Shown: positions 38,891-61,225, counted from the stretch's first letter. The stretch: DNA of 64,000 nucleotides from Octopus bimaculoides (GCF_001194135.2 NC_068981.1:173522036-173586035); one strand, 5' to 3'. Program-made: numbers and translations. The notes: generated by a model from the sequence alone, not told the origin.

Positions 38891-39188
38891 GTACATGACA
38901 GGAACATTGATAGAGAGAAACAGTCTCTCTTGACCCTGAGATAGAAGGATACACCAACTGTATTCAAGTACAGGAAAAACTTTGAAATACATAACTAATA
39001 AAACAGATGTGTGCCCCTAAACAACCATGCTGAAACCAAAAAAAAAGAAAAAGTATTCTGCCATACCAGTCTATAACATTTCCTACACATTGATAACAGA
39101 TTCTCTTAAATGTGTATATGATATTAACTTGTCATTGTTTGTTCTGATAAACACAACAAAAGTACCACCCAAGGTACTAAAATTCTAT

Positions 39189-39598
39189 AGGAGCAGGCAT
39201 CACTGTGTAGTTAAGAAGCTCATTTGACAACCACATGGTTTTGTGTTTAGTCCCAATGTATGGTGCCTTGGACAAATGTCTGTTACTATAGCCATGGTTT
39301 GCCCAATGTCTTGTGAATGTGTAGAAGCTAGTCATATGTGTATGTCTGTATGTATATGTGTATGCATAGATGTTTGTGTTTTTGTGTATGTGCGTGTGTT
39401 TGTCTCACATTGTTTGACAAGCAATATTGAGTTATGTTGCAGTAACTTAGCAGTTCAGCAAAAAGAGACCAATAGAATAAGTGCTAAACTTAAAATATGT
39501 TATCAGGAGGAGGGATCAATCTGCTCAACTAGATTTTTTAATGTAATGTTCCAGCATGGCCATAACCCATTGAACAAAACAAGTAGAGGATAAAAGAA
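39189..39598 (+). mobile_element. SINE family A, old full-length copy
   Basis: Decayed head, GCCTTGGACAAATGTC, internal TG tract, TTCCAGCATGGCC tail block. Confidence 0.65.
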
Positions 39599-40004
39599 TG
39601 CATATGTTGTCATCATTTTATGTTTTCTTTCCATACAAGTGTGGGTTGGATGTGTGGATTGGATGTGTGGATTGGATGTGTAGCACATATTCAGGGCTTC
39701 AGCCCACTTAGATGGGAAAGGGGACCTCATAGTGCTCCTATTTCATATTTGGTTTAGTTTCTATAGCTGGATGCCCTTAACTTAATAACAAGTACTTTAC
39801 AGAATGAGAAGAATGTGTAAAAGAATGTGCAATGAAAGAATAGAAGTATGAAAGAGTGTGACTGGGGTGTCTTGACAGGAATCATCAGTAAAGATAGAAA
39901 CCTAAGGTGTGTGGGTGAAAAGAGCAAAAGGCTGACGGTAGACAGAGTGAATCAGGTTGATGATAGGTAATGCAAGAGAGGGAGGGTGAATGTTGTGTGT
40001 ACTT

Positions 40005-40250
40005 CCTTCTCGGGTCACACTGACTCATAAGGGCTAGTTTCCTGGTTTCCATGGTATATATATTCCCTACCTTGATGGGACACCAGTCCATCACAAGATT
40101 ACTCCTTTTTGCCAGCTGAGTGGACTGGAGCAACGTGAAATGAAGTGTTTTGCTCAAGAACACAATGAGTCACTCAGTCCAGGTATTGAAACCACAATCT
40201 TACGCTCATGAGTCCAACACCCCAACTACTAAGCCATGCACCTCCGCTGT
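40005..40250 (-). mobile_element. tRNA-headed SINE with CTTGAGCAAAACACTT central motif (related old copy at approx 59960-60200)
   Basis: rc head GGAGGTGCATGGCTTAGTAGTTGGGG...GTGGTTTCAATACCTGG then TTCTTGAGCAAAACACTTCATTTCACGTTGCTCCAGTCCACTCAGCTGG. Confidence 0.6.
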
Positions 40251-42106
40251 ATATNNNNNNNNNNNNNNNNNNNNNNNNNNNNNNNNNNNNNNNNNNNNNN
40301 NNNNNNNNNNNNNNNNNNNNNNNNNNNNNNNNNNNNNNNNNNNNNNNNNNNNNNNNNNNNNNNNNNNNNNNNNNNNNNNNNNNNNNNNNNNNNNNNNNNN
40401 NNNNNNNNNNNNNNNNNNNNNNNNNNNNNNNNNNNNNNNNNNNNNNNNNNNNNNNNNNNNNNNNNNNNNNNNNNNNNNNNNNNNNNNNNNNNNNNNNNNN
40501 NNNNNNNNNNNNNNNNNNNNNNNNNNNNNNNNNNNNNNNNNNNNNNNNNNNNNNNNNNNNNNNNNNNNNNNNNNNNNNNNNNNNNNNNNNNNNNNNNNNN
40601 NNNNNNNNNNNNNNNNNNNNNNNNNNNNNNNNNNNNNNNNNNNNNNNNNNNNNNNNNNNNNNNNNNNNNNNNNNNNNNNNNNNNNNNNNNNNNNNNNNNN
40701 NNNNNNNNNNNNNNNNNNNNNNNNNNNNNNNNNNNNNNNNNNNNNNNNNNNNNNNNNNNNNNNNNNNNNNNNNNNNNNNNNNNNNNNNNNNNNNNNNNNN
40801 NNNNNNNNNNNNNNNNNNNNNNNNNNNNNNNNNNNNNNNNNNNNNNNNNNNNNNNNNNNNNNNNNNNNNNNNNNNNNNNNNNNNNNNNNNNNNNNNNNNN
40901 NNNNNNNNNNNNNNNNNNNNATATATATAAAGATGGAACAAAAACAATAGAGGACAATAGTAAGATTTGGACAGATAGACGATACAAAGGCGGACAAGAG
41001 AAACAACAGTTAGAAGGACAGGCAAAAGAAGACAGGTCATTCATGGCCTTCTTTCTTCAGTCAAGTACTAGATGTCATGACCATTTCGGGCAGTTACACT
41101 TGAGATGGTTCGATCTGTTTGCCCCCAAAAAAGTCTAAGCTAAGAGCATTAGACCCCTTTGTAAAAAAGCTAGCGTATATATATCACAACAAAGACAAAA
41201 AATGGAGAACATGGAACACAATATGAATACAAACAACAAGGAATAACAACAGGTGTCTTTTGACAGAACAAATCAATTGAGCTGGCATGTATGAAGTGAA
41301 AGCCTAAAGGCAGGAACATAGAAGATGGACATAAGAGGTGTTGGTGGTCGGCAGTCAGGCCAAAAAAGAAAGATCATGGCTGGCCGGACACTGGTCATGT
41401 GGAAGGAGGAGAGATGGGTAGGGGGCAGTGAGATTGAAGGATTAGAAAAAAATCACAAACAAAGAGAAAGGTACAGAGGAGATAAACGAGTGGGAAATAG
41501 TGGGAGTTAAAGAAAGAGAGGGCCAAGAATTACAAAAATTACTACCTGCTTTTATAGCAAGTTAATGCAGGTAGTTTATCCCATCCCACTCTAACTTTTA
41601 GTTCAAGCAATTGAAAAATCTGCATTATTTATGGGATGACCCAATATATGTGTGTGTGTGTGTGTGTGTNNNNNNNNNNNNNNNNNNNNNNNNNNNNNNN
41701 NNNNNNNNNNNNNNNNNNNNNNNNNNNNNNNNNNNNNNNNNNNNNNNNNNNNNNNNNNNNNNNNNNNNNNNNNNNNNNNNNNNNNNNNNNNNNNNNNNNN
41801 NNNNNNNNNNNNNNNNNNNNNNNNNNNNNNNNNNNNNNNNNNNNNNNNNNNNNNNNNNNNNNNNNNNNNNNNNNNNNNNNNNNNNNNNNNNNNNNNNNNN
41901 NNNNNNNNNNNNNNNNNNNNNNNNNNNNNNNNNNNNNNNNNNNNNNNNNNNNNNNNNNNNNNNNTAAATGTCATAAGATAAAGATAATAATATTAATTTT
42001 TCTATATGTGATAGTGGATTTTCATCGATGAGTTCATGAAACTTGGTTCTTTTCCCTAAAACTATATATTGATATATATATATATATATTCACACACACA
42101 CATACA

Positions 42107-42348
42107 CACGTAAAAAAGACCATTTTGAGCGTGGCTGTTGCCAGTACCGTGTGACTGGCCCTCGTGCCGGTGGCATGTAAAAGCACCCACTACACTCTCG
42201 GAGTGGTTGGCGTTAGGAAGGGCATCCAGCTGTAGAAACTCTGCCAGATCAGATTGGAGCCTGGTGCAGCCATCTGGTTCACCAGTCCTCAGTCAAATCG
42301 TCCAATCCATGCTAGCATGGAAATCAGACGTTAAACGATGATGATGAT
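42107..42348 (+). mobile_element. Young RTE 3' end
   Basis: Family match; (GAT)n tail. Confidence 0.85.
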
Positions 42349-42821
42349 ATATATATACATATAAATATATATATACACATATACATATATGTATATACAT
42401 ATATACACACACATATACATATGTATGAATGCCCATAAAGGATTATATGATTAACTCCATTGGGAACATTGATTACATCTACTGAGGTATGTGAAATTTA
42501 AAAGGAAAGTAAATAAATAAATAAAAGATAACCTAACCATTGTCTCAATTAGAGAAAATGAATGAGAAAGTAGCAACTACACACATTCATAATTACTCTA
42601 TTTACTTAATTTGAAAGGCAATCTCATTATGTTTGATGATTCGCCACACACACACAGAGGCAAACCCACACACACACACACCTATGCATGCATGCATATG
42701 CATACACACTTCTTCCGTAAAAGATTATGAAGCATTAGTATTAGTTGGTATGCATACAATATGTGCATGCATGCATGAGTGTATATATGAATATATATAT
42801 GCACACATGTATGTATGTATA

Positions 42822-43202
42822 GGTGCAGGAGTGGCTGTGTGGTAAGTAGCTTACTTACCAACCACATGGTTCCAGGTTCAGTCCCACTGCGTGGCACCTT
42901 GGGCAAGTGTCTTCTACTATAGCCTCAGGCCGACCAAAGCCTTGTGAGTGGATTTGGTAGATGGAAACTGAAAGAAGCCCGTCGTATATATGTGTATATA
43001 TATATATGTGTGTTTGTGTGTCTGTGTTTGTCCCCTCACCATCACTTGACAACCGATGGTGGTGTGTTTACGTCCCCATAACTTAGCGGTCCGGCAAAAG
43101 AGACCGATAGAATAAGTCCTGGGGTCGATTTGCTCGACTAAAGGCGGTGCTCCAGCATGGCTGCAGTCAAGTGACTGAAACAAGTAAAAGAGTAAAAGAG
43201 TA
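42822..43202 (+). mobile_element. SINE family A, full length
   Basis: GGTGCAGGAGTGGCTGTGTGGTAAG head to GTAAAAGAGTAAAAGAG tail. Confidence 0.9.
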
Positions 43203-43231
43203 TGTGTGCATGCAGGTATGTGTATACATAT

Positions 43232-43436
43232 TCTTTTACTTATTTCAGTCATTTGACTGTGGCCATGCTGGAGCACTGCCTTTAGTCAAACAAATCGACT
43301 CCAGGACTTATTCTTTGTAAGTTCAGTACTTATTCTATTGGTCACTTTTGCCGAATTGCTAAGATATGGGGATGTAAACACACCAGCATCGATTGTCAGG
43401 CAATGATGGGGGGACAAACACAGACACACAAACATA

Positions 43437-43469
<33 letters not shown>

Positions 43470-43602
43470 GACAGGCTTCTTTCAGTTTCCGTCTACCAAA
43501 TCCACTCACAAGGCTTTGGTTGGCCCAGGGCTATAGTAGAAGACACTTGCCCAAGATGCCACACAATGGGACTGAACCTGGAACCATGTGGTTAGTAAGC
43601 AA
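43232..43602 (-). mobile_element. SINE family A, near full length, tail-to-tail with the previous copy
   Basis: Reverse complement of 42850-43195; 29 nt spacer. Confidence 0.9.
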
Positions 43603-43628
43603 ATGTATGTATGTATGTCTGAATGTAT

Positions 43629-43666
<38 letters not shown>

Positions 43667-43668
<2 letters not shown>

Positions 43669-44317
43669 TAATCATCATCATGATCATCATCGCTTAATGT
43701 CCGTTTTCCATGCTAGCATGGGTCGGATGGTTTGACCTGGGTCTGGGAAGCCAGAAGGCTGCACCAGGCTCCAATCTGATCTGGCAGTGTTTCTACAGCT
43801 GGATGCCCTTCCTAACACCAACCACTCTGTGAGTGTAGTGGGTGCTTTTTACATGCCACTGGCACAGGGACCAGAGGAGGCTGGCAACAGCCACGATTGG
43901 TTGGTGCATTTTACATGCCACATGGAAGTCAGTCAATGGCAGTGCTGGTATCGGCCACGTTCAGATGGTGCTTTTTACGTGCCACCGGCACAGGTATCAC
44001 AAATGCAATTTCCATTTGATTTTTATTTTGGTGTTGATGTACTTGACTCAATAGGTCTCCTCAAGCACAGCAGGTTGTCCTATAATCCAAGGTAAGCACA
44101 GCAGGTCACCCCACGATCCAAGGTACTTTTGAATGGGCTGGGGCTCACATTTCTTAAAAATTGTGGTCAGGCCTTGGTCTCAGGACCACTCATGTCTAGA
44201 AACTGAGTTTGGGGGTAAGCAAGGGCATGCTCCCCATAGAAAATCCAGCTCCAAAAAAGCCTCATGATAGCAAGGGTGAATGGGCACTAGCCAGCCCAAA
44301 GTTTGGGGCAGGCTGCA
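43667..44317 (-). mobile_element. RTE-type element: 3' UTR, ORF end (AVLEET), 31 bp tandem duplication, then non-RT upstream sequence cut by a 10-N join
   Basis: (CAT)n tail at 43667; rc CCTGCTGTGCTTGAGGAGACC at 44054-44074; 31 bp units at 44063-44093 and 44094-44124. Confidence 0.7.
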
Positions 44318-44687
44318 NNNNNNNNNNATGAATTATGCTTTTAATTTTAAGTAATATTATTAAATGTTTTTCATTTATTTATTGTATTAACACATATTTT
44401 TCTATATTTATTTCTATTTTTAATTAATTATTATGTGGTAAGATACGTACATTGATTTTTTATTTTATTCTAGACCCGATGAGTGACTATATTTTTAAAT
44501 AGAATTAAATTTGGATCGATTTATTTTTGAATTGAATTGATTTTATCTGTTTTAATATAGCCACGAAATGCGTGTAGTCAACTTAGTACTATTTACTTTT
44601 TATGCTTTATTGAATTCTTAGATTAGTATTTTTATAGTGTATTTTTTTCTGGGTGGTGTCATTGAGGCATGGAAAGCGGACGTTAAA

Positions 44688-44719
<32 letters not shown>

Positions 44720-44723
<4 letters not shown>

Positions 44724-45190
44724 CTTTTTTACTTGTTTCAGTCATTTGACTGCGGCCATGCTGGAGCACCACCNNNNNNNNNNTATATATATATATATAT
44801 ATATATTACTTTTTTACTTGTTTCAGTCATTTGACTGCGGCCATGCTGGAGCACCACCTTTAGTCGAGCAAATCGACCCCAGGACTTATTTCTTTTTTTG
44901 GAAGCCTAGTACTTATTCTATCGATCTCGTTTGCCGAACCACTAAGTTACGGGGACGCAAACACACCAGCATCGGTTGTCAAGCGATGTTGGGGGGACAA
45001 ACACAGACACACAAACACATACATATATATATACGACGGGCTTCTTTCAGTTTCCGTCTACCAAATCCACTCACAAGGCTTTGGTCAGCCCGAGGCTATA
45101 GTAGAAGACACTTGCCCAAGATGCCATGCAGTGGGACTGAACCCAGAACCATGTGGTTGGTAAGCTAGCTATTTACCACACAGCCACTCA
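44720..45190 (-). mobile_element. SINE family A, full length; tail duplicated across the 10-N join at 44774-44783 (assembly overlap)
   Basis: Family match; identical ~50 bp either side of the join. Confidence 0.85.
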
Positions 45191-45885
45191 ATATTATACA
45201 TATATATATATCATATATGTATCACTATATATATATGTATCACTNNNNNNNNNNNNNNNNNNNNNNNNNNNNNNNNNNNNNNNNNNNNNNNNNNNNNNNN
45301 NNNNNNNNNNNNNNNNNNNNNNNNNNNNNNNNNNNNNNNNNNNNNNNNNNNNNNNNNNNNNNNNNNNNNNNNNNNNNNNNNNNNNNNNNNNNNNNNNNNN
45401 NNNNNNNNNNNNNNNNNNNNNNNNNNNNNNNNNNNNNNNNNNNNNNNNNNNNNNNNNNNNNNNNNNNNNNNNNNNNNNNNNNNNNNNNNNNNNNNNNNNN
45501 NNNNNNNNNNNNNNNNNNNNNNNNNNNNNNNNNNNNNNNNNNNNNNNNNNNNNNNNNNNNNNNNNNNNNNNNNNNNNNNNNNNNNNNNNNNNNNNNNNNN
45601 NNNNNNNNNNNNNNNNNNNNNNNNNNNNNNNNNNNNNNNNNNNNNNNNNNNNNNNNNNNNNNNNNNNNNNNNNNNNNNNNNNNNNNNNNNNNNNNAATAA
45701 TAAATTGAACAATTATAAATTCTATTCCATTTAAATATTTTATACAAACAAATGACTCATCTTGTAGATCTTCTTTGTCTTCCGGAACATTTCTTCCATC
45801 AGCTTCAAAGTTATCTCTAATATGAATGATTGTAAGTCGACTAGGTGGATGTGCTTGAAACTCCCTTCTAAATTGTCTAAATTGT

Positions 45886-45916
<31 letters not shown>

Positions 45917-46476
45917 TTATATGTATATATTATATTATAAATATGTTATATATACATATATCATATCATATTATATTAAATCATATATGTAACATGGGCA
46001 GTAGTTTTACACTCTGATCTCATGCTGACCAAAGACTTGTGAGTGTATTCGGTATATGGAAACTGAAAAAAAACACCTTATTGTATAATGATGTAAGTTT
46101 GTGCATGGGTGAGTGTGTATGTGTGTGTGCATGGGTGTGTGCGTGTAAATGTGTATGTGTCTGTGTGAATGTGTATGTGTGTATGTGTCTGTGTCACACA
46201 TGCACAGTTACACACACATACATACATACAAAATATTCAAAGAGTGACATCACTGTTTGCAGCTCAGCCGCAAATGACGACATCACTGTTTATGGTTGGA
46301 CTGCAATTGGTGACATTTGTTTACATTTCCTATGAACAAATTGCCCACTAACTCCCTGCTTTTCAGCCCTATCGGAATTACAATAAAATCCTTTATTTGA
46401 ACAATTGGTAAGGTTTAGCGACAACTAGTATATCCAGCCCTAAAAATCATTCCATTAAAAAATTTATTTGCTTAAA

Positions 46477-46515
<39 letters not shown>

Positions 46516-46525
46516 NNNNNNNNNN

Positions 46526-46684
46526 GTTTTTACGCTCTAAGCGAGTTCAAATTCCGCCGAGGTCGACTTTGCTTTTCATCCTTTCGGGTTCGATAAAATA
46601 AGTACCTGCCGAGCAGTGATGTAATCACCTTAACCCCTTTCTCAAACGAAATTGCTGGCCTTGTGCCAGAATTTGAAACCAATA
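46526..46684 (+). mobile_element. SINE family B, CpG-retaining
   Basis: GCGAGTTCAAATTCCGCCGAGGTCGACTTTGC...TTTCGGGTTCGATAAAATAAGTACC. Confidence 0.85.
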
Positions 46685-47902
46685 TAAGAGAAAAATGTAT
46701 GGGTATGTATTCCGTTACCACCACCATCATCATCATGATTCGGCATCTATCTGGGGACACAATTACTAGCCCCGAAAACATCATTTCCCATTTTCCTGCC
46801 CAACTGATGGAGCTTTGTTCCAATTTCATTTCAGCATGTCCTTGTTTATACCCTGCATCCCAATATAACTAGCTAAACCATAAGTACATAAACCAGGTAC
46901 TTTTTGACGAAACTTCGGGCGATACAAATAAATTTTGTCGTATTCATGGCTATTAAACTTGTGTGCCTGTGTATTAGGTGTATATATTATATATAAATAA
47001 GCATATATATATAATGTACGTGAGTGTGTCTGTGTTTATGTTACACCGGTCTAAAAACTGGTTCTGTTTATGTTATATCCCATTATGTCCCCTAACCTGG
47101 CAACTGAACATGCATTATTCGACAAAATGTGTACCAGAGTGGAATAGGTACTGGGGTCGATAAAGCTGACCTAAAGCCCTGAAAACAATGCTCCAGCATG
47201 ATCACAATACAACTACTGAGATCAGTAAAAGATGACTTTTTTTTAGGAAGACAGAAATATAGAAACGCAGAAATGGAAATGAATCATACATATGTCGCGC
47301 AGAGCGCATGAAGAGAGAAAGAAAGCGAGAGAGGTATATATATATATATATATATATNNNNNNNNNNNNNNNNNNNNNNNNNNNNNNNNNNNNNNNNNNN
47401 NNNNNNNNNNNNNNNNNNNNNNNNNNNNNNNNNNNNNNNNNNNNNNNNNNNNNNNNNNNNNNNNNNNNNNNNNNNNNNNNNNNNNNNNNNNNNNNNNNNN
47501 NNNNNNNNNNNNNNNNNNNNNNNNNNNNNNNNNNNNNNNNNNNNNNNNNNNNNNNNNNNNNNNNNNNNNNNNNNNNNNNNNNNNNNNNNNNNNNNNNNNN
47601 NNNNNNNNNNNNNNNNNNNNNNNNNNNNNNNNNNNNNNNNNNNNNNNNNNNNNNNNNNNNNNNNNNNNNNNNNNNNNNNNNNNNNNNNNNNNNNNNNNNN
47701 NNNNNNNNNNNNNNNNNNNNNNNNNNNNNNNNNNNNNNNNNNNNNNNNNNNNNNNNNNNNNNNNNNNNNNNNNNNNNNNNNNNNNNNNNNNNNNNNNNNN
47801 NNNNNNNNNNNNNNNNNNNNNNNNNNNNNNNNNNNNNNNNNNNNNNNNNNNNNNNNNNNNNNNNNNNNNNNNNNNNNNNNTATATATATAATAATAATAA
47901 TA

Positions 47903-47940
<38 letters not shown>

Positions 47941-48286
47941 TACAAATCAGCAAAGTAAAAACGATAGTGTATTTAAGTGTAGTTTTGAATGGTTACAATG
48001 ATTAACTCGATGAAATTTTCTTAATCTCAACACGATGTAAGATGAAATCATTTGTCGTACAAGTGCATGTTAAGAACAACATATCTATCTTACACACACA
48101 TACATATAAGACGTAAGTATATGTAATATATGTGTAATAAATGCTATATAATATGATATAAATATGACATTTGTCATGTTAGATGATGGCACGTTCAGCA
48201 AAATTTAACTATGGATGACGTTTTCTCATTCTTACTTACGAAGAAACAAAACATTATACACATATACACACACCAAATTATAACCA

Positions 48287-48317
<31 letters not shown>

Positions 48318-48402
48318 GTATGTATGAATATGTCTATCTATCTATCTATATGCACACAAACACAAATAAATGCATGCATACATATATACATAAATGAATA
48401 TG

Positions 48403-48482
<80 letters not shown>

Positions 48483-48560
48483 ATAATTTGTAATACTTAC
48501 TCAGTATTGGAATTGTTGCATTCACTTGACGGCACTTGAGCATATCTAGCATAGTTGAAG

Positions 48561-48568
48561 TATAAAAG
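48561..48568 (+). promoter_or_regulatory. Candidate TATA box inside the CpG-retaining domain
   Basis: TATAAAAG followed by GC-rich CGGAGCGACCAGGCG; consensus donor GAGG|GTAAGA at 48745/48746; the motif alone is weak evidence in AT-rich DNA. Confidence 0.25.
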
Positions 48569-49034
48569 CGGAGCGACCAGGCGATCTTATAGGATTATAA
48601 ACAAAAGGTTTGCAATGAAAGTACGAAATACATTTGGCATCAGAGTGGATATCACCTGTATCGAAGTGCCACTTGTGTGATGATAACCTAGTCATCGCCA
48701 TCGCTAGCTACTACAGCAGCAAGGTATTATTAATCGACGGGGAGGGTAAGAAAGAAGAGAAGAAAGCACATATATATGGGTGTGTGTTTGTGTATACATA
48801 CGTGTACGTGATGTATTATAATATTATCTGTGTATAGACGCGTACGCATAGACATACATATATGTATATTGCCACTGCTGTCGCTGGTTGACTGCTATTG
48901 GATGACTCGTTTTTACCCCGTCACTGGCATCGATGTTCAATAAGCTTTGAGAATCAAGCAAGCAACCTCGATTATTAGTGTAGAAATGCAGAGCTCGTCT
49001 AACCACTCACACTACATGAACACTTGCTAACAAA

Positions 49035-49246
49035 CAAGGGAGCCTCTACGTGGTTGTTCGGCTTGCTAGAAAGAGCAGCCAAATTGTCTTTGAATGACAC
49101 CCTGCTATCTTGAAATAGAGAACGCATTGGATAATGTATTTAAAAAAAAATCTTTTTGATATCCCTAAAAAGACAGGATGGTCCTAGTTAGAACTCCTTT
49201 ACGCTCAATCAGAACTGACTTGGGGGTGGGGCCCTAAACAACAACT
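49035..49246 (+). mobile_element. Family C SINE remnant, CpG-retaining (another at 51128-51292, -)
   Basis: TACGTGG...GCTAGAAAGAGCAGCCAAAT...CATTGGATAATGTA...AAACAACAAC. Confidence 0.7.
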
Positions 49247-49312
49247 GGCTATTATTCGAATGCACAATGGCACACATATTCACACATGTATATACAGGTA
49301 TGCATACATACA

Positions 49313-49376
<64 letters not shown>

Positions 49377-50877
49377 ATATAGGATACACTTACATGCGCG
49401 CGCGCGCGCACACACACACACACACACACAGATATATGCAATGCTATACACTTAGAAGCTCGCACATGCATGTATTACTCTCTCTTTTACAGTTTAGGCC
49501 CCTCTCAGTCCTAAGTTATGATTTAAGGCACTGAAGGCGCGAACATCTCGATTTTCATTTTATTTTTCGAGGCGTAGTGTAGCACTGGGCAACAACTATT
49601 ACCCAATGGTACCCTTCCCCTTTTAATACAGTAGAATGTGATGAAAGAGATTTGTGTGCTATTTCTAGCAGATTGAGCGATCACGTGAAGCCTTATACTT
49701 TGGTTCGTCGTTATTTCTGTGTGTGTGCATACATTTATACATATGCATACATTTATAGAGTTGAACCTCATTATCGATTTGCTCATAAGGGCACTATTTG
49801 CTGACTTTATCCTTAAGCGGCGTAAATCAGCTGGCAACTCATCATTACTAGCTAATGAATTGCTTGTCAGTTTCCCTATTGTATCTGTACACAACTTGTT
49901 TATTTATAAGCTGTAGCAAGACCACGATAGTTATGCAATTCATGTCCATGGACGACATGCATCTCCATGGTGGGACGTGAGCCAACACCCTACTCAGACA
50001 TGTACATACAAAACTATGGTTAGTTATATTATTATGAATGTAGATACACTAATGTGAGATGTTCACTTATAATTATAAATAACTGAATGTAAATCATTGC
50101 CCTTGTTATTGTTGTGATTATTTATTTCGTTTGTTACCTCGGTCCGTGGCGATTTGTAAACCAGGCGAGTGACCCGATTTAAGTAACCAATCTAGATCTC
50201 TTCATTCAGTTTTGGTAATGTTCTTCTCATTTCTTATAAAAAATATTTAAAAATAAAAAATGAAATAATGATGTAAAGGAACCCAATAATTAAATATGTA
50301 TATTAAAAATTATATGCTTCTTTAATTTTTCTTTAATTACTAAACATTTGATGCCCTTAATTTACAACTTAACATGCCATAATTCGTTGAGAAAACATAA
50401 TTTACAAAACTGGAAAATGGAGAGAAAAAAAATGTAAAATGGAAATTAGTAATTAAATTATCAAAATAGAAACGTACACATTCCTTCAATTATATACCGC
50501 GCTAGAGGAAACTGGTATTACCCTCTAAAAATTTTAAGACACTCCAAAGCAGTTGCAGTATTACAGCTGTTGATTGCATAATTGAGGCACAGTTCCGCGT
50601 TTTAACTGGCTTATGTGAATTTACTATCCCCAAATATACTAACCTTAAAAATATCAGTAGCATATTGAAAATATTCTTTATTCTCTCTTTATACTCTAGA
50701 AACTAGAAATGCAATTATTTAGGGGTAGATGGAATAACTTTAGAAAATAACTTCTAAAAATGCGCACCGCGTTCCCTTTTTCTAGATTTTTATTTTCCCC
50801 CAGGAACTTCAGAGTTGCGACTTAAAATATAAACCAGCCTCTTAGATTCAATAACATCAAAAATAATTCTTTTCTAC

Positions 50878-51024
50878 TATAAGCACAAGGCCTGAAATTT
50901 TGTGGGACGGGGTTAGTCGATTTCATCGACTTGACTGGTTCTTATTTCATCGGCCCCGAAAGAATGAAAGGCCAAGTCGATCTCGGCGGAATTTGAGCTC
51001 AGAACGTAAAGAGTTGGAAGAAAT
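50878..51024 (-). mobile_element. SINE family B, diverged but CpG-retaining, 5'-truncated
   Basis: GCACAAGGCCTGAAATTTTG...GTCGATTTCATCGAC...CCCCGAAAGAATGAAAGGCCAAGTCGATCTCGGCGGAATTTGAGCTCAGAACG. Confidence 0.8.
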
Positions 51025-51780
51025 GAATAATAACTATAATAATATACTACTCTGTATATGGGATATTTTTCTTGTCAGTCTACTGGAAGCTGTAGACTGT
51101 TAAAATCTAGAATTAAATTGGCATTGATGATTATTTTTCTTTGGTTATTAGCCCTAACTCAGCTTTGATTGAGCACACCTATAACCAAAGTCATTCCAAC
51201 CATGACTATCCCGTCTTTTTTATATACCAAGGACTACATTACCTCTATTTTTAAGATCGTAGGGTGTGATTTGCGGGAGATTTGACTGCAGATCGTATAA
51301 CCCTATTGGCTTGACTGTGTAAACTGGCACCATTGTGAAAGTAAGGAATATAGAATAAAATCTAATGAAATAAAAGCATTTAATATTGCGGAATACAGTA
51401 CATTGTGATAGTTCTCTACTGTTATTGGCGATCATTGGTTTAAACCAGAGATGGCCCCGTTATTATCAAATTATTAAAAGGGTTTTTCTTCGTCTGATTT
51501 TTTAAAATCGGCATGACCGCAACCCATATAATGTGAGTGATATTTTTTCTTCTAGTCGTTGTACTTGGAATTAGAACACGCATGTTCAAAAATTGTTCGT
51601 AACAATATGTATATTTTATTTGTCTGAAGGGGAAAAAAAAAACGCTTTATATACACTCATATTCATACTTCTCATGCGCATACAAAGCAGCATATACGGC
51701 CGTATACGTATACATGTGTGCGTTGTTTTATATACATAGATACACTGACATCACCATCAGCATCACAAATCACCACCACC

Positions 51781-51826
<46 letters not shown>

Positions 51827-52200
51827 CCAACATAAGTGTTTTCTTTCTTCCATTCTGGCAATTCGTTTTAATTGCGACTTGCTTCAGTTCTGCTCCCTCT
51901 TGTCTGGAAGCCCAATTATCCTTCAATTCAACCATACCACTTTCTGCGAATATACACACGCATACATACTTACATACATGCATGTATTTCTGTATGCATG
52001 CATGTATTTATGTATGCATGCATGCATGCATGTATGTATATATGTATATATGTATGTATGTAGGTAGGTAGGAACATAGGTAGGTGGGTAGTTAGGTCTG
52101 TAGGAAGGTACGTACGTATGTATGCAGGTAGGTAGGTAGCATGGTACGTACGTACGTATGTGTGTATGTATGTATGTATATTAGTAGGAAGATACGTACG

Positions 52201-52237
<37 letters not shown>

Positions 52238-52666
52238 GTGTGTGTGTGTGTGTGAAAGCGTATACGGCATAACAGAGTTAGAAGTAAACCACAGAAAATA
52301 CTATTTGGAATTTGGTTACGTCCCTTTACATGTTCAGTTCAAAATAACTACCCAATTTCTATGTTTATCATCATTCCGAGATTTAAAAGACGAACACGAG
52401 TTGATGAAATCTGGCGTGTTTTTGAACGCGATTCCCCATCACGATTGCAATACAATGACCGAAACGTGTACACACACATACATACAGGGGGGGGGGGTTA
52501 ATGTCAGCTAGTAAGTGAGAGAGGGTGAGCGATGGGCAGTGATGAAAAAAGTGAGGGGTGGCTTAGTGCAGTGAATAGGAGTGGAAATGAGAATGATAGA
52601 TGAAAAGTTCGAGTATAAAAGAGGTGCAGCAGATAGACATTAACAGGTACAAAATGAGCGAAAGGT

Positions 52667-52721
<55 letters not shown>

Positions 52722-52731
52722 TTTCATATTT

Positions 52732-53058
52732 TATCTTTTACTTGTTTCAGCATCAGACTGCGGCCATCTAGGGGCACCGTCTTAGAGAATTTTTTCATCG
52801 AATGTATTCACCCCAGTACTTATTCTATCGATCTCTATTACCGAGCCGCCAAGTCACAGGGACGTAAAAACACCAGCACTGTTGTCAAACAGTGGTGGAG
52901 GTGGACAAAAACACACACACACACACGATGGACTACTTTCAATTTCCATCTATCAGATCCACACGCAAGGCTTTGGTCGGCCCAAGTCTTATAGTAGAAG
53001 ACATTTGCCCAAAGTGCCACACAGTGGGATTGAACCCTGAACCATGTGGTTGGGCCAC
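52732..53058 (-). mobile_element. SINE family A, diverged, CpG-retaining
   Basis: Family match from the CTTTTACTTGTTTCAG tail to AACCATGTGGTTGG. Confidence 0.8.
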
Positions 53059-54786
53059 TATCTTAATATACATTTTATCATATTTGTATAAGAGAGCAGA
53101 TCTTTTCTAAAGGTGACATCTTGAGATGCATTGTAGGCATAAGCTCGAAACAACAAAGATTCTTCCATTCTTAATGAGCATCAAACTAGTGCCCCTTGTT
53201 GTTCCCTCAATTGTCTCTGCTTTTTGTATAATTTTGAACTATGTGTGTGTGTGTGTGTGTGTATGTATTGAGAGAGAGAGAGAGAGAGATGCATTCATAT
53301 GTATGAATTTCTATTTTCCTCCCTTATGTTGTTTTAACTTCATTTCATCTCTGATCAGCACAACCATAATTGAGAAACGTTCCACCCATGAATATCTTGT
53401 CTCTATAGGAATATGTAAGACTACATTAGCTAATGTGTCCTTTCTTTTTTAAATGGTAGAGTGTTATTTGAGGGAAACATAACTGCCATTTCCAGCAAGT
53501 CGAATAAATACATGGAGGTGGATCCCTTGTTGGCTTAATCTGAGAATAAATGAGTGCTGGGAGTGTGCTAGGGATTAAGATAGGGTAAAGTCTGTATTAT
53601 GTTGCCAACAATTTAGTCAAAGGAGACTTTCAAGAAAATTAATAAATTTGATTACTATAAAGAGTGGAAAGCTCTACTAAGAGCTTTTAGAGTGCTCAAT
53701 GCATCCCTAGGTGGGGGTGAACTCTGTTGTTGCACTTCCACATCATGTCAATGTGGGTGTTCTTTTGGGACATGGGGCAGGGTGGATATGACCTTAGTCA
53801 TGATTAACGTGGCATGGATGCAAACAACTGGCATGATATCAAGACTAGCTCTCAGTATCCATTTTTGAGAGGAGTTACAAACTAGGTGAGTTGAGCCTGG
53901 AGTGTCATAAAACTGCCTAGGAGAGGGAAGCTCTGATTTCACATCCCCAGCAAGTGAAGCTTGTGAATATGGACAGCACTGCAATTATCAAATGAAGGAA
54001 AACCAGACATAAAACCAATTCTCCTTCAGGTCTTGAAAATTGGGCATTGGGCTAATCCCCTAATCCCGGAAAAAAAAAAAAAGTCTGATTCCAGAATCTT
54101 CAAACATTCAGAAGCATCCACAATGTCTTGGAGAGAGCAGTTCCTAGCCTGGAAAGAGAAGGAAGAACAGCACACTTAATTGAAAGTTGAGAGGAAGCTC
54201 AGGGGCTGATTACATCGCTGCATGGTTTCTTGAAAGAAGGAGTAAGTGCAGAAAACCCAAGAACAGCTGGAGTTGGCTTGTGGATGGGGAATGTGGAATC
54301 AAGTGCAAACCACAGTCTTCATCAAGATCAAAATGCATATAAGAGAACCTGTATGCAGTCAGTTGACTAACCTAAGATAGCAGGAAAAAGTTTCTTTTAC
54401 ATCATAACCCTAATATCTCACAAAAACAGAAAAGAAAGAAAGAAAAGTAGAGCACATCGCATAGTGTGTTGTAATGCATTCTATCTAAGGTGCATTGTGA
54501 GTGTGGGAGGGAGATAAGTTGGCTTTGACTGCAATGGATTTGATAGATTCATTCAACTTGTTCTGACTCGAAGGCTCTACTACTACTACTACCACCACCA
54601 CCACCACCACCACCACCACCACCACCACTACTACTATCAAATGGACAAGTAAAAACTTTGTTTTATATATCCAGGACTAGCCAATGCTATTCAATTCAAA
54701 CACTATTCTATATTCTCTATATTTTCTAAGCAAACAATCCTTTTTGTTAATAAAGAAACTGCTGCTGGAGGGCAAAAGCCTTTCTA

Positions 54787-56004
54787 CAAGTGGTGGGCTG
54801 AGAAGTTCATAAGCTGACTATGAAGGAGTGATGCTAGAGTTGTGAAATCTTGCAAGCATTCATTTCATCTCTTCTTAATTAATAATAACTGCATTGTTTC
54901 TTTCCAGGTAAACTGACTTCTGACTGTTCAAAGAAGACTTCAAAAGTAAATAGTAGAGACTTCTCTTGAAAATGGACAAAATTTGGCATCATAGTGTTAT
55001 CAAGTACCTACAAAAAAAGAGTTTACCCCCCAACGATATTCATGCTGGCATGGTTGCTACATTAGGAGATGATGCTCCAGCTTTATCAACAGTGGGCAGA
55101 TGAATTTAGGAGGGGAAAGGAGAAAGGAGGGTCTTAAAGAAGACCCAAGTTCTGGACTTCCTGACCACCAAAGAAAACATTTATTGTGTTCACCACAGGT
55201 ACTCACCTGTGGTGAACACAATCAATGCTATTAGTATATCCTGTGGGAGAGTGGAGAATATTCTGCACAATTAACTTGGCATGAGAGATGTTTGGTGGAT
55301 GAAATGTCTTCTAATACTTGACCAAAAGTTCACCAAGCTGATCACATCATGGGAAAATCTAACATTGTTTGAGGCAGATACAGGATGAGTGTTGGGTTCA
55401 TCCCTTCAAGCTAGAGACAAAGAGACAATCCATGCAGCAGAAACACTTCTCTTCACCTGCTCCAAAGAAGACCAATGTTGTTTTGTTTGGGCTCAGTTTT
55501 TTTTGGATGCAAAAAGCATTGAGTTTATTGACTGTCTTCTAAAGGGCCACATCATCAATGGAGCTTACTATGCTAACCTGCTGAGGAAAGGTTTTCAAGA
55601 CCAAACACCCAGGAAAACAGACAAAATAGATGTTGTTTCATCAAGACAATGCTCCAGTACACAGGTCGTTGGTTTCAATGGCTGTTGTGCATGATTATGG
55701 CTTTAAACTGGTTGATTAGCCTCCCTATTCTCCTGATCTGGCCCCATCTGACTATCATCTGTTCCCCAATATGAAAGAAACTTGACTAAGAACCAGTATC
55801 ACAGTGATGATGACATCATATCTACTGCTGATGACTTTGTGACCAACAAGATTAAAGCTTCTTCAGCAATGGGATCTAAGTGCTGTGACACCAATGGAAG
55901 AAGTGTGTGAACCATAAGGTGGACTATTTTGAAAGTTAAACCTCATTTGATCACATTCCATGAGAGTATCTTGATCAGCCTATGAACTTTTCAGCTGACC
56001 CTTG
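54787..56004 (+). mobile_element. Near full-length dead mariner (DD34D-type) transposon, 1218 bp, TA TSD
   Basis: TIRs TA|CAAGTGGTGGGCTGAGAAGTTCATAAGCTGA and TCAGCCTATGAACTTTTCAGCTGACCCTTG|TA; ATG at 54972 (MDKIWHHSVIKYLQKK); PPYSPDLAPSDYHLF at 55720-55764; many frameshifts and stops. Confidence 0.92.
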
Positions 56005-56179
56005 TAACAATTTACTAAATCCGTGATTAGGACAATTAATTCTTTACATAAAAAAAATTGGATCCATCAGTTAGAGAAAAAGTTTGAAACAGGATCAATT
56101 ACTATTGATTCTATCAATTAACTGGAAATGTCTTTAAATGCTTTCATTAATCCTTCATCTGTAAAATTAAATTTTATGC

Positions 56180-56526
56180 CCAGCGTCGCCTTCCTGGCAC
56201 TTGTGCCGGTGGCACGTGTAAAGACATTCGAGTGAGATCGTTGCCAGTGCCGCTGGACTGGCTCCTGTGCAGGTGGCACGTAAAATACACCATTTTGAGC
56301 GTGGCCATTGCCAGTACCGCCTGACTGGCCTTCACGCCGGTGGCATGTAAAAGCACCCACTACACTCTCGGAGTGGTTGGCGTTAGGAAGGGCATCCAGC
56401 TGTAGAAACTCTGCCAAATCAGATTGGAGCTTGGTGTAGCCATCTGGTTCACCAGTCCTCAGTTAAATCGTCCAACCCATGCTAGCATGGAAAGTGGACG
56501 TTAAACGATGATGATGATGATGATGA
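56180..56526 (+). mobile_element. Young RTE 3' end with three internal modules
   Basis: Repeated GGTGGCA(C/T)GT modules, then the common terminal block and (GAT)n. Confidence 0.85.
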
Positions 56527-57042
56527 TTCCAGTAATCATGATAAATATCTACCAAAAAGTAGAATTGGTATTTTCTGCAATCATGTTGCCTCAATAAACT
56601 TGACACATCTTAACAGAAAACTGTTTCAATCAAAAAAAAAAGATAGATTGGTGCATAAAGCTGCTCTCCACAATTAAGGATGATATAATTTTGAGTGGAT
56701 ATATCTGCTTCTCATGGTGGAAGGGTTTATTTTTGTTTCAAATTAGTACCACAAACATATGACAAAGATAAAAAGCAACAGCTGCAGAAATAAATGATAT
56801 AAATAATATAAAAAAAAACGTCAATTAGCCTTAGATTGTAGTTTTAATTAGCTGCTACTGCAAACATTTGTTAATTAGTTAATTAGCAACTTGATAGTCT
56901 TCCTATTGAAGAGTTTACATATGTTTATAAGTATGTATGTATGTGTGTGTATGTATGTATGTATGTATGTATGGACATACATACAGATGTATACGTGTAT
57001 GTGTGTGTATGTGCGTGTGTACATGATGTATATGTATGTATG

Positions 57043-57250
57043 TGGGGGAGTGCTGAAAGTTCCCAATTTTAAGAGTATCACGAAAGGCCTGGTTGGAGGT
57101 CCAACCTTCTGAGTTCTTTTACAGGCCTTAGAAAATCTGAAGGGCCAGTGCAAGGAGTGTGTGAATAAGAGAGGGGGGTATGTTAAATAAAATCATAATT
57201 AACTGATCCTCCTGTATTTTCTTGTACCCAAAGCCAGGAACTTGTCAGCA
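57043..57250 (-). mobile_element. Mariner-like MITE, second copy
   Basis: GGGGGAGTGCTGAAAGTTCC ... AAAGCCAGGAACTTGTCAGCA; interior is rc of 28022-28222. Confidence 0.7.
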
Positions 57251-57350
57251 TACATGCATATATATGTGTGTATATCTATCTATTTATCTGTCTGTCTGTC
57301 TGTCTGTCTGTCTATATATATATGTATGTATGAGTGTGTGTGTGTATATA

Positions 57351-57379
<29 letters not shown>

Positions 57380-57381
<2 letters not shown>

Positions 57382-57735
57382 TGGGCCTCACGGAGGCAAT
57401 AACCGAGACATTTGGCATTATGTTGTGCTTGAGAAGAAGCTCTATCAAGCTGAGTAAAATTGCAGTTGTGGCAGATACCAGTGTCACGCAAATTGGCACC
57501 CATGCTGGTGGCACGTAAATGCACCCTGGTGTCACACAAATGACACCTGTGCCAGTGGCACGTAAAAGCACCCATTACACTCTTGGAGTGGTTGGCATTA
57601 GGAAGGGCATCCAGCCATAGAAAACCATCCTAAATCAGACTGGAGTCTGGTGCAGCCTTCCAGTGAACTAGCCCAGTCAAACTGTCAAATCCATGCCAGC
57701 ATGGACAACAGATGTTAAATGATGATGATGATGAT
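57380..57735 (+). mobile_element. 5'-truncated RTE: last codons of the ORF plus 3' UTR
   Basis: RDIWHYVVLEKKLYQAE* directly followed by the modular UTR and (GAT)n tail. Confidence 0.75.
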
Positions 57736-59112
57736 ATATGTATGTACGTATGTAGTACATCCCTACATACATACATACATACATACATACATAAAGATAA
57801 ATTTCCAAATTTGGTTTTTCTAACCAGCAGAGTTGAAAGGGTCAAAATTTAGATTATTTTTAGGAATACTAACACCACATGTATGAAAAATTTTGGTTGG
57901 ACTTGTTTTGAATCTCTCTCATCTATATGTATGCCATATTCACTGGTTTGTAAACAACTGCTTCGTTAATGGTGCTATTTGCTTGTAGTCCACTATGAAA
58001 GCACGTCAGGGCTGTTAACTGGGAGATATTATCTCACTTGGAAGCAAGTGGGGATTTATGACAGGAAGAGCATGCATCTAGCTGCAGGAAAAACTCCACT
58101 CCATCATGCTCCCATCTGATCCATATAAGCATGGAAAAGTAGATGTTAAAATAATGATGGTGGTGGTGACAATGATGATGACGACGATGACGACAATGTC
58201 AACGACAAAGACAATGATGACAATGAGGATAAAGATGAAGATAATGATAGTCATTGGGTAAAAGCAACAAAAATCTATATGGTAAATTCATGTCTCCTAG
58301 TAGATAAAACCAATTAGTGAAGTCAATGAATTCAATAAACAGAAGACCCAATGGTTGAGGTGGGTTTAATTAAGGTTTGGTCTCTTATTTTAATAGTTGG
58401 GAATTGTATTCTAAATAAAGAACTAAATTCCAGGTTTACTTACCTAAGACACTACAGTTACAAAATAAAAAGCACAATTCACTGTTGGAGTTCCGAAGAT
58501 AAAAAAACCCTAAAACTAGAGATTACTAATAACTTTATAGTCTGTATGTTATTAACAAGACTTGATTAGTTCCTCCCACAAAATAGTGAATATTCCGGCT
58601 GACGTACAAAAGTCAACTGACCATTATTAAAATACTTGAATAAAGTCAGGAACTAGGCCATATATATTAAGTTTCTATTTTCTCAGCTACCATACAGTCT
58701 GAAACAGAAATTAGTTTGTGTGCATTTGATATTAGTTTTATGCTAAGTTTCACAATCTCTGACCATCACTCATGATAACTGTGTTTTTATAACATTGTCT
58801 TAAGATTGTATCCTAATGGAGGGAATTTCTACTTAGGTAAAGAAACTATTTTTAGTCTGAATAGCTAATGACATCTTACAATGCAAAGAGGTACCTTGCT
58901 ATCCCAACTCTGTGTCTCACCCTAAAAGAAAATTCACAACAGATTCTTTTCTCAGTTCTTCCTTTTTAGAACTATAAACCTTTCATTACTTACTCCAGCA
59001 GTGTTATCTGATATATTCCTTATTGATATACTCAGAGGCTCTAATTTACATGTATAGTAAATTGAAAAGGTGCATGTTATACTTATACCTTGCATTATAG
59101 ATATTGCTTATT

Positions 59113-59564
59113 AAGGTGGTGAACTACCTGAGTTGTTAGTATGTTGGGTAAAATGCTTAGCAGTATTTTGTCTGTCTTTATATCCTGAGTTCAAATTCTG
59201 CCGAGGTTGACTTTGCCTTTCATTCTTTCAGGGTCAATAAAATAAGTACTTGTCAAGTACTAGGGTTGATGTAATCAACTATTCCCCCACCTTCCTGTAA
59301 ATTTCAGGCTTTGTGCCTGTAACAGAAAGGATTATAGATATTGTTTATTGAAGGTGGTGAACTGGCAGAATCATTAGCACACCAGACAGCATGCTTAGTG
59401 GCATTTCTTCCAGGATACAGTTCTGAGTTCAAAATCTGCTAAAGTCAACTTTGTCTTTCATACTTTCAAGGTCAATAAAGCAAATACCAGTTGAGCACTG
59501 GGGTCAGTGTAATCTACCAATCCCTCCCCACAAATTTTCAGGCCTTATACCTTTAGTAGAATGG
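59113..59564 (+). mobile_element. Two tandem SINE family B copies (59113-59330, 59351-59564) bracketed by three copies of one target sequence; family C remnant follows at approx 59585-59790 (-)
   Basis: ATTATAGATATTG(C/T)(T/A)TATT at 59094-59112, 59331-59349 and 59565-59583. Confidence 0.85.
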
Positions 59565-61154: not shown

Positions 61155-61222
61155 TAATTTATTAACCCTATTACTGTGCATTTCACATTAATTTATTAAC
61201 CCTATTACTGTGCATTTCACAT
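61155..61222 (+). repeat. Perfect 34 bp tandem duplication
   Basis: TAATTTATTAACCCTATTACTGTGCATTTCACAT at 61155-61188 and 61189-61222. Confidence 0.9.
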
Positions 61223-61225
61223 TTT

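What the first reader, a model, noticed from the sequence alone, without database searches (positions are those of the whole stretch)
44330..53500. ~9 kb CpG-retaining domain between two CpG-empty domains
Seen: hand counts give 20 CpGs in 48541-49020, versus 0 in 31261-31740 and 0 in 58621-59100 (480 bp each). CpGs are scattered through unique sequence from about 44330 to 53500 and are rare outside young repeats elsewhere. Established: molluscs have mosaic, largely gene-body methylation, which erodes CpG in transcribed regions. Inference: the flanks are methylated introns of one or two genes, and this block is an unmethylated promoter/intergenic or methylation-valley region. That would map gene boundaries without any visible exon. 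Caveat: the left edge sits at the 10-N join at 44318-44327, so a scaffolding join could contribute.
Basis: partly seen in the sequence, partly recalled or inferred. Interest (0 to 1): 0.7.

Follow-up and report, generated by a model that had tools for sequence, protein, structure and literature searches.

The report
Long-lived unmethylated DNA domain (inferred)
A 6.5-8.7 kb non-coding stretch has kept its CpG dinucleotides while the DNA on both sides lost about 80% of theirs, which is the expected sequence footprint of a region that stayed unmethylated in the germ line of an animal with patchy DNA methylation; it is real but an ordinary kind of feature.

Summary
CpG observed/expected is 0.83 in 44328-53000, against 0.27 on the left and 0.25 on the right. 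After masking repeats it is 0.82 against 0.22 and 0.19, and GC content is about 35% throughout.

The best-fitting segment is 44446-52983. The core is 46526-52983. The right edge is an 8-fold step inside a gap-free contig, so it is not a scaffolding artefact. The left edge coincides with a 10-N gap and a young SINE, and stays uncertain.

The decisive evidence is an internal control. Old SINE copies inside the block keep 11 of 14 ancestral CpG sites. Equally old copies of the same family outside keep 4 of 47, and their losses are TpG/CpA. The block is therefore old DNA with about 10-fold slower CpG decay, not young DNA. This is the signature of long-term germline hypomethylation.

No exon, protein domain, ncRNA, terminal repeat or classical CpG island was found in the block. 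No exon was found in 22-64 kb. The organism was not identified.

This is a new instance of a well-known kind, a mosaic invertebrate methylome. Interest is low to moderate.

The parts
46526..52983 (.). Core CpG-retaining domain: non-coding, about 36% GC, CpG o/e about 0.85
   Evidence: CpG o/e is 0.83 for 46526-47357 and 0.87 for 47881-52983. The masked ML segment is 46900-53055. No Pfam domain, protein homologue or Rfam family was found.
44328..46515 (.). Left shoulder of the domain: four small contigs with mixed CpG o/e; membership in the domain is uncertain
   Evidence: CpG o/e is 1.42 for 44328-44773 (only 9 CpG at 24% GC), 0.75 for 44784-45244 (a young SINE) and 0.42 for 45696-46515. The unique 322 bp just left of the gap (43996-44317) has o/e 0.06.
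44774..44783 (.). Spurious 10-N gap: an unmerged 75-bp contig overlap
   Evidence: 44699-44773 is identical to 44784-44858.
44792..45242 (+). Young copy of SINE-like family A. It keeps its CpGs because it is young, so it says nothing about the domain.
   Evidence: Non-CpG divergence is 0.07-0.08, with 13 of 17 or 13 of 24 CpG sites kept. Young copies outside behave the same way.
46526..46690 (+). Old, 5'-truncated copy of SINE-like family B inside the block, with CpGs retained
   Evidence: Branch length is 0.11-0.14 on non-CpG columns. It keeps 5 of 6 (sites defined from outside copies) or 6 of 7 ancestral CpG sites.
50855..51030 (-). Old copy of SINE-like family B inside the block, with CpGs retained
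   Evidence: Branch length is 0.14-0.15. It keeps 6 of 8 or 7 of 7 CpG sites, with no TpG/CpA decay.
52729..53054 (+). Old copy of SINE-like family A that straddles the right boundary. It is preceded by a (CA)25 array at 52668-52717.
   Evidence: Divergence is 0.22-0.24. It keeps 8 of 16 CpG sites, against 10 of 71 in old outside copies. The last CpG of the dense run is at 52978, followed by 53146, 53378 and 53501.
53055..64000 (.). Right CpG-depleted flank, on the same gap-free contig as the core up to 63013
   Evidence: CpG o/e is 0.11 in 52984-55000, and 0.26 raw or 0.19 masked in 52984-63013. Old SINE-B copies at 59100-59340 and 59340-59570 keep 1 of 12 and 0 of 12 CpG sites.
1..44317 (.). 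Left CpG-depleted flank
   Evidence: CpG o/e is 0.27 raw and 0.22 masked for 1-42000. Old SINE-B copies at 8090-8320 and 38665-38895 keep 2 of 11 and 1 of 12 CpG sites.
49397..49408 (.). (CG)6 microsatellite within the core. One other such run, (CG)4, is at 60810.
   Evidence: Regex scan and sequence read.

Best explanation
The block is a stretch of ordinary, old, non-coding host DNA that has stayed unmethylated in the germ line for a long evolutionary time. It is embedded in DNA that has been methylated.

Mechanism. This part comes from established knowledge of 5-methylcytosine deamination and of mosaic invertebrate methylomes. It was not measured here. Methylated CpGs deaminate to TpG/CpA roughly ten times faster than other bases mutate, so methylated domains lose their CpGs. 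An unmethylated domain loses CpGs only at the background rate.

Shown here:
- There is a 4-fold difference in CpG o/e at equal GC content.
- There is an 8-fold step at the right edge within a gap-free contig.
- Same-age SINE copies keep their CpGs inside the block at the neutral expectation: 11 of 14 observed (0.79), against about 0.76 expected for any dinucleotide at branch length 0.13.
- Outside the block they lose them about 10 times faster (4 of 47 kept), and almost all of those losses are TpG/CpA.

Inferred, not shown:
- The cause is germline methylation status.
- The flanks are bodies of genes transcribed in the germ line.
- The block is one of three things: the spacer between two such transcription units; the unmethylated promoter and 5' part of a gene; or an unmethylated, germline-silent gene or regulatory region.
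For: CpG o/e is 0.82 against 0.22 and 0.19 after masking, at equal GC. The ML segmentation has an LLR of 73-82, against permutation maxima of 12-30.

The TpG+CpA o/e is lower inside (1.19) than in the flanks (1.30-1.31).

The gap-free contig 47881-63013 holds the step from o/e 0.87 to 0.11.

SINE family B, matched age: inside copies keep 13 of 14 CpG sites and four outside copies keep 2 of 36 (Fisher p = 4e-9). With sites defined from outside copies only, the figures are 11 of 14 against 4 of 47, and 40 of those 47 outside sites are TG or CA. Three-point branch lengths on non-CpG columns are 0.11-0.15 inside and 0.11-0.16 for the old outside copies.

SINE family A: the edge copy keeps 8 of 16 sites, against 10 of 71 in old outside copies (p = 0.004).

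The block carries the same SINE families and a similar CpG-free 4-mer profile as the flanks (r = 0.84-0.95), so it belongs to the same genome.

Literature. In Ciona sperm, methylated and unmethylated domains have sharp boundaries, and 83% of methylated DNA overlaps genes (PMC3827831). In Octopus bimaculoides, fewer than 10% of CpGs are methylated and these cluster in gene bodies. Intergenic CpGs are largely unmethylated. [quoted passage not shown]
Against: Methylation was not measured, and the organism and its methylation machinery were not identified.

No exon was found in either flank within 22-64 kb. The link between the methylated flanks and gene bodies is therefore unsupported here.

The internal control rests on three informative copies (two of family B, one of family A). 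Subfamily structure could bias the inferred ancestral sites.

The left edge coincides with a gap (44318-44327), and the left 3 kb of the block is assembled from four small scaffolded contigs.

Part of the sequence that is unique within the window could be young transposon sequence, which only a genome-wide repeat library would reveal.
Confidence: 0.75

Rival explanations
1. The block is young DNA. It could be a recent insertion, a segmental duplication from an unmethylated locus, or a mosaic of young transposons that are single-copy in this window. In that case it has simply not had time to lose its CpGs.
For: Young SINE copies anywhere in the window keep 50-76% of their CpG sites. Only intrawindow repeats could be masked. 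Two same-orientation family A copies lie near the two ends of the block (44792-45242 and 52729-53054).
Against: The two SINE-B copies and the edge SINE-A copy inside the block are as diverged at non-CpG positions as the CpG-eroded copies outside. The DNA around 46.5, 50.9 and 52.8 kb is therefore old.

No LTR or TIR pair bounds the block other than the dispersed SINE, which also occurs about 12 times elsewhere in both orientations. No reverse transcriptase, transposase or any other Pfam domain was found, and there is no protein homologue.

A recent transfer of an old, already unmethylated segment from elsewhere cannot be excluded.
Confidence: 0.1
2. The block is an assembly artefact. Contigs from a different, unmethylated part of the genome were scaffolded or mis-joined here.
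For: The left edge sits exactly at the 10-N gap 44318-44327, with no overlap between its sides. 44328-47357 consists of four contigs of 0.45-0.83 kb separated by gaps. The right edge lies in a SINE preceded by a (CA)25 array.
Against: The 5.1-kb core and 10 kb of depleted flank lie on one gap-free contig. The SINE copy at the junction is old and diverged: 0.22 from the consensus, and at most 77-86% identical to other copies. A k-mer mis-join through it is therefore unlikely.

Three of the five short gaps are exact unmerged overlaps, that is, true adjacencies. The small contigs left of the core share the CpG-retaining state.
Confidence: 0.07
3. CpGs are kept for a reason other than methylation status. 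Candidates are purifying selection on dense regulatory sites, GC-biased gene conversion, or a locally different mutation spectrum.
For: Nothing specific. It stays formally possible only because methylation was not measured.
Against: GC content is not raised (0.35 against 0.36-0.37). GpC is only slightly higher (1.13 against 1.02 and 0.95). CpGs are retained even inside SINE relics. Retention matches the neutral dinucleotide expectation rather than exceeding it. Non-CpG divergence of the SINE copies is the same inside and outside.
Confidence: 0.04
4. The block is foreign or organellar DNA, such as a contaminant, a horizontal transfer or a mitochondrial insertion.
For: Its CpG level is near expectation, unlike the rest of the window.
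Against: The block holds the host's own SINE families and microsatellites. It has no ORF longer than 126 aa, no Pfam domain (including no mitochondrial genes) and no protein homologue. Its CpG-free 4-mer profile resembles the flanks.
Confidence: 0.02

Closest known systems
Unmethylated domains of mosaic (fractional) invertebrate methylomes, as mapped in Ciona intestinalis sperm (Suzuki et al., PMC3827831 and its reference 11)
   Same: It is a kilobase-scale domain with near-expected CpG content next to strongly CpG-depleted domains. It has at least one sharp boundary. The state appears stable over long times.
   Different: Here the methylation state is only inferred from sequence. No genes could be placed in the depleted flanks. 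The organism is unidentified.
Gene methylation patterns in Octopus bimaculoides (Macchi et al. 2022, PMC9476566): MP2 (body methylated, promoter and TSS free), MP3 (first third free), MP4 (unmethylated genes) and unmethylated intergenic DNA
   Same: The block could be any of these unmethylated compartments, flanked by methylated gene bodies. The window's SINE- and microsatellite-rich, AT-rich make-up resembles what I recall of octopus genomes. That resemblance is from memory and was not tested.
   Different: No TSS, exon or transcript evidence is available, so the compartment cannot be assigned. Species identity was not established.
Vertebrate CpG islands and non-methylated islands
   Same: It is an unmethylated (inferred) island with CpG o/e above 0.6 in a CpG-poor background.
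   Different: GC is 35%, not 50% or more. No 200-bp window of the unique block meets the Gardiner-Garden and Frommer criteria; only SINE copies do. At 6.5-8.7 kb it is also much longer than a typical island.
DNA methylation valleys or canyons over developmental regulator genes
   Same: It is a hypomethylated (inferred) region several kilobases long.
   Different: No homeobox or other transcription-factor domain, nor any coding sequence, was detected. The surrounding genome is a mosaic methylome, not a globally methylated one.

Membership tests
Unmethylated domain of a mosaic invertebrate methylome | A kilobase-scale domain with CpG o/e near 1, adjacent to domains with strong CpG depletion at similar GC | tested here: met
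   0.82 against 0.22 and 0.19 after masking; GC 0.35-0.37. LLR 73-82, against null maxima of 12-30.
Unmethylated domain of a mosaic invertebrate methylome | Sharp boundaries between the two states | tested here: inconclusive
   Right edge: o/e 0.87 falls to 0.11 within about 170 bp in a gap-free contig. Left edge: it falls on a 10-N gap with small contigs of mixed values.
Unmethylated domain of a mosaic invertebrate methylome | CpG loss in the depleted domains is by C-to-T transition (TpG/CpA) and is faster than background; in the retained domain it runs at the background rate | tested here: met
   SINE-B: 40 of 47 outside sites are TG or CA and 4 of 47 are kept. Inside, 11 of 14 are kept, against a neutral expectation of about 0.76. 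Fisher p = 4e-9 with the first site definition.
Unmethylated domain of a mosaic invertebrate methylome | Direct absence of 5mC in germline DNA of the domain, and presence in the flanks | not testable with these tools
   No methylation data are available, and the organism was not identified.
Unmethylated domain of a mosaic invertebrate methylome | Methylated domains coincide with transcription units | tested here: inconclusive
   No exon or protein match was found in 22-64 kb. The searches were insensitive to short or diverged exons. Strand skews are uninformative.
Classical CpG island (Gardiner-Garden and Frommer) | At least 200 bp with GC of 50% or more and CpG o/e of 0.6 or more | tested here: not met
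   Inside the block, the only qualifying window is the young SINE at 44950-45149. The unique core has none. Block GC is 0.35.
DNA methylation valley or canyon | Covers a developmental transcription-factor gene | tested here: not met
   Six-frame Pfam scans found no domain. No protein homologue was found.
DNA methylation valley or canyon | A hypomethylated region of at least 3.5 kb marked by H3K27me3 and/or H3K4me3 | not testable with these tools
   The size criterion would be met (6.5-8.7 kb), but chromatin and methylation data are lacking.
Young transposable element insertion | Terminal repeats (LTR or TIR) and coding capacity, or multiple near-identical copies | tested here: not met
   No bounding repeats beyond a dispersed SINE. 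No reverse transcriptase or transposase domain. No other copy in the window. Genome-wide copy number is not testable.

The most novel reading that the evidence does not exclude
The block is not a plain intergenic spacer. It is an evolutionarily old methylation-free valley inside one long, germline-transcribed gene. It is actively protected, for example by an unannotated alternative promoter, an enhancer cluster or a non-coding RNA promoter. Its right border is pinned to within about 170 bp at a (CA)25 array and SINE junction, which acts as a sequence-encoded stop to the spread of methylation.
Probability: 0.1. Interest if true: 0.45.

Novelty: new member of a known kind. Interest (0 to 1): 0.25.

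Why it matters
If the inference holds, sequence alone records the germline methylation map of this locus. It also shows that one domain border has stayed put long enough for about 13% neutral substitution. This adds a small data point for the evolutionary stability of mosaic methylomes, and gives annotators a hint that a transcription-unit boundary or regulatory region lies near 53.0 kb.

The same-family, same-age SINE comparison is a cheap internal control. It separates unmethylated DNA from merely young DNA without any methylation data, and it could be applied genome-wide.

The finding does not reveal a new kind of element.

Tried and rejected
- **Six-frame Pfam scans of 44328-53503** found nothing above noise.
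- **Concatenated ORF queries against 5.8 billion proteins** gave no hit at E <= 0.001. They covered the block (>=30 aa), the right flank (>=32 aa) and the left flank 22-44.3 kb (>=40 aa). A first 8831-aa query exceeded the 5000-aa limit. Even a 77-aa mariner-like control piece found nothing, so sensitivity to diverged matches was low.
- **Full HMMER search of the longest block ORF** (49526-49903, minus strand, 126 aa) against 1.84 billion representatives found 0 hits.
- **Pfam on right-flank ORFs** found nothing.
- **Rfam at gathering threshold and ARAGORN** on the whole window found nothing. Rfam in E-value mode on the block found only microsatellite-derived miRNA look-alikes far below their gathering scores.
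- **Search for LTR or TIR pairs bounding the block** found none beyond dispersed SINE copies.
- **Strand skews as a proxy for transcription direction** were weak and inconsistent.
- **Classical CpG-island criteria** are met only by SINE copies.
- **Attempts to identify the organism** failed: SINE strings in the literature and two metagenome scans gave no matches.
- **Rejected readings:** foreign or organellar DNA, because host SINEs lie inside the block; and GC-biased gene conversion, because GC is not raised.


Full report
**Observation.** The window is 64 kb, 36% GC, and has 14 runs of N.

48541-49020 has 20 CpG against 19.4 expected. 31261-31740 and 58621-59100 each have 0, against 13.8 and 11.7 expected.

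In 1-kb bins, CpG observed/expected is 0.5-1.1 from 44 to 53 kb and mostly 0.03-0.4 elsewhere. The outside peaks of 0.4-0.66 lie at 9-10, 16, 22-24, 29, 42-43, 56 and 62 kb. All of these peaks lie on repeats found by self-BLAST.

After masking intrawindow repeats and TRF arrays, the block 44328-53000 has o/e 0.82. The left flank has 0.22 and the right flank 0.19, at nearly equal GC.

A two-changepoint likelihood scan of P(G|C) picks 44446-52983 (0.145 against 0.049, LLR 72.9). On masked sequence it picks 46900-53055 (LLR 82). Permutation nulls reach at most 12, or at most 30 when blocks are permuted. Tiles of 480 bp have a median of 13 CpG inside and 3 outside (p = 6e-8).

The right edge is near 52980-53150 rather than 53500.

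**Gaps and assembly.** The scan program asked that the gaps be tested first.

- Gap 44774-44783 is not a gap. The 75 bases before it are identical to the 75 bases after it, so it is an unmerged contig overlap. The same holds at 6826 (57 bp) and 16472 (152 bp).
- Gaps 44318-44327 and 46516-46525 show no overlap.
- The sized gaps 45245-45695 and 47358-47880 break at microsatellites, and continuity cannot be checked there.
- Contig 47881-63013 has no gap and contains the right boundary. CpG o/e is 0.87 in 47881-52983, 0.11 in the next 2 kb and 0.19-0.26 up to 63013.

The SINE copy at that junction is old and diverged, so an assembler mis-join through it is unlikely.

The left boundary is less certain. 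The unique 322 bp left of the gap has o/e 0.06. The four small contigs to its right read 1.42, 0.75 (a young SINE), 0.42 and 0.83. This boundary depends on scaffolding.

**Content of the block.**
- There is no ORF longer than 126 aa without N.
- There is no Pfam domain in any of the six frames.
- No homologue was found among 5.8 billion proteins for its ORFs of 30 aa or more.
- The longest ORF has no hit in a full HMMER search of 1.84 billion representatives.
- No tRNA or Rfam family reaches threshold. The sub-threshold matches are microsatellite look-alikes.
- No LTR or TIR pair bounds the block.
- No 200-bp window of its unique sequence meets classical CpG-island criteria.

By eye, the sequence is AT-rich, microsatellite-studded and non-coding-looking, with evenly scattered CpGs and a (CG)6 run. 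It carries the same two SINE-like families as the flanks. Its CpG-free 4-mer profile resembles theirs. It is therefore host DNA, not a contaminant or an organellar insertion.

**Young DNA or slowly decaying DNA?** This is the key question. Young repeats anywhere in the window keep their CpGs. I used dispersed repeats as an internal clock to separate the two possibilities.

Family B is about 230 bp. It has two copies inside the block (46526-46690 and 50855-51030) and six outside.
- On non-CpG columns, three-point branch lengths are 0.11-0.15 for the inside copies. They are 0.11-0.16 for four old outside copies and 0.08-0.10 for two younger outside copies.
- At inferred ancestral CpG sites, the inside copies keep 13 of 14. 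The four equally old outside copies keep 2 of 36 (Fisher p = 4e-9).
- I then defined the sites from outside copies only, which biases against the result. The figures become 11 of 14 against 4 of 47, and 40 of the 47 outside sites read TG or CA.

Family A is about 450 bp. The old copy at the right edge (52729-53054, divergence 0.22) keeps 8 of 16 sites. Old outside copies keep 10 of 71 (p = 0.004). The family A copy at 44792-45242 is young and therefore uninformative.

At branch length 0.13, any dinucleotide is expected to survive with probability of about 0.76. The inside copies show 0.79, so CpG is not hypermutable there. Outside, the implied loss rate is about ten times higher. These two figures are my inference.

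The block is therefore old DNA in which CpG has decayed at the background rate for as long as it takes to accumulate about 13% neutral change.

**Explanation.** Rapid, transition-type CpG loss is the established consequence of cytosine methylation in the germ line, and its absence marks unmethylated DNA.

Mosaic methylomes with sharply bounded methylated and unmethylated domains are documented in Ciona sperm. There, 83% of methylated DNA overlaps genes, and the pattern is constant across tissues (PMC3827831).

In Octopus bimaculoides, fewer than 10% of CpGs are methylated and they cluster in gene bodies. Intergenic CpGs are mostly unmethylated. Genes fall into classes that lack methylation at the promoter and TSS, in the first third, or throughout (PMC9476566).

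The block fits an unmethylated compartment of such a genome, and the flanks fit methylated ones. I hold this with a confidence of about 0.75.

Which compartment it is cannot be decided. The options are an intergenic spacer, the promoter and 5' part of a gene, an unmethylated gene, or an intragenic valley. No exon was found in 22-64 kb and strand skews are uninformative. Those searches used long concatenated queries and would miss short or diverged exons. Even a mariner-like control fragment gave no hit.

**Rivals.**
- Young or recently transferred DNA (0.10) is contradicted by the old SINE copies inside the block. Relocation of an already old, unmethylated segment cannot be excluded.
- Assembly artefact (0.07) is excluded for the right edge but not for the left 3 kb.
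- Selection, biased gene conversion or another mutational cause (0.04) does not fit the unchanged GC, the retention inside SINE relics, or the match to the neutral expectation.
- Foreign or organellar DNA (0.02) is excluded by the host SINEs.

**Comparison with known systems, and novelty.** The feature works like, and on sequence criteria qualifies as, an unmethylated domain of a mosaic invertebrate methylome. The defining direct test, 5mC mapping, could not be done.

It is not a classical CpG island, because GC is 35%. It shows none of the gene content of a methylation valley. Inferring methylation from CpG o/e is a long-established method.

This is therefore a new instance of a known kind. 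The only mildly new points are the same-age SINE control and the evidence for a long-lived, sharply placed border at a (CA)25 and SINE junction.

The organism was not identified by any tool.

**Verdict.** Interest is low to moderate (0.25).

Noticed in passing
6826-6839, 16472-16481, 44774-44783: Three of the five 10-14-N gaps are unmerged exact contig overlaps of 57, 152 and 75 bp. The sequence is continuous across them, and those bases are duplicated in the assembly.
   Followed up: yes
29850-30400, 35400-36200, 54900-56000: Three degenerate relics look like Tc1/mariner transposase by eye (motifs such as QQDLAPCHTS and WPPNLSDCNL). Only 55431-55691 gives a weak Pfam match: PF01359 Transposase_1, E = 0.0038, below the cutoff. 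All three lie in the CpG-depleted flanks.
   Followed up: partly
9413-9735, 23620-24025, 24396-24736, 27166-27419, 29085-29356, 42107-42421, 43700-43995, 56193-56677, 57470-57799, 62583-62897: A third dispersed repeat family is GC- and CpG-rich, and translates as ...LQLDALPNANHS.SVVGAFTCH.... It accounts for most CpG peaks outside the block and for most windows that meet CpG-island criteria. I found no copy inside the block.
   Followed up: partly
37999-38278: This stretch is single-copy within the window, has GC of 50% or more and CpG o/e of 0.6 or more, and lies in the depleted left flank. It is probably a young repeat whose other copies lie outside the window. It was not examined further.
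   Followed up: no
49397-49408 and 52105-52200: CpG-containing simple repeats, (CG)6 and (TACG)/(GTAC) units within the 51978-52207 array, survive inside the block. The only comparable run outside is (CG)4 at 60810-60817.
   Followed up: partly
44063-44125: A 31-bp tandem duplication (2 copies, 81% identical) lies just left of the gap that marks the left edge of the block.
   Followed up: no
most sized gaps (254, 14460, 23221, 41670, 45245, 47358): These gaps begin or end in TA, CA/GT or similar microsatellites, as expected when a short-read assembly breaks at simple repeats.
   Followed up: partly
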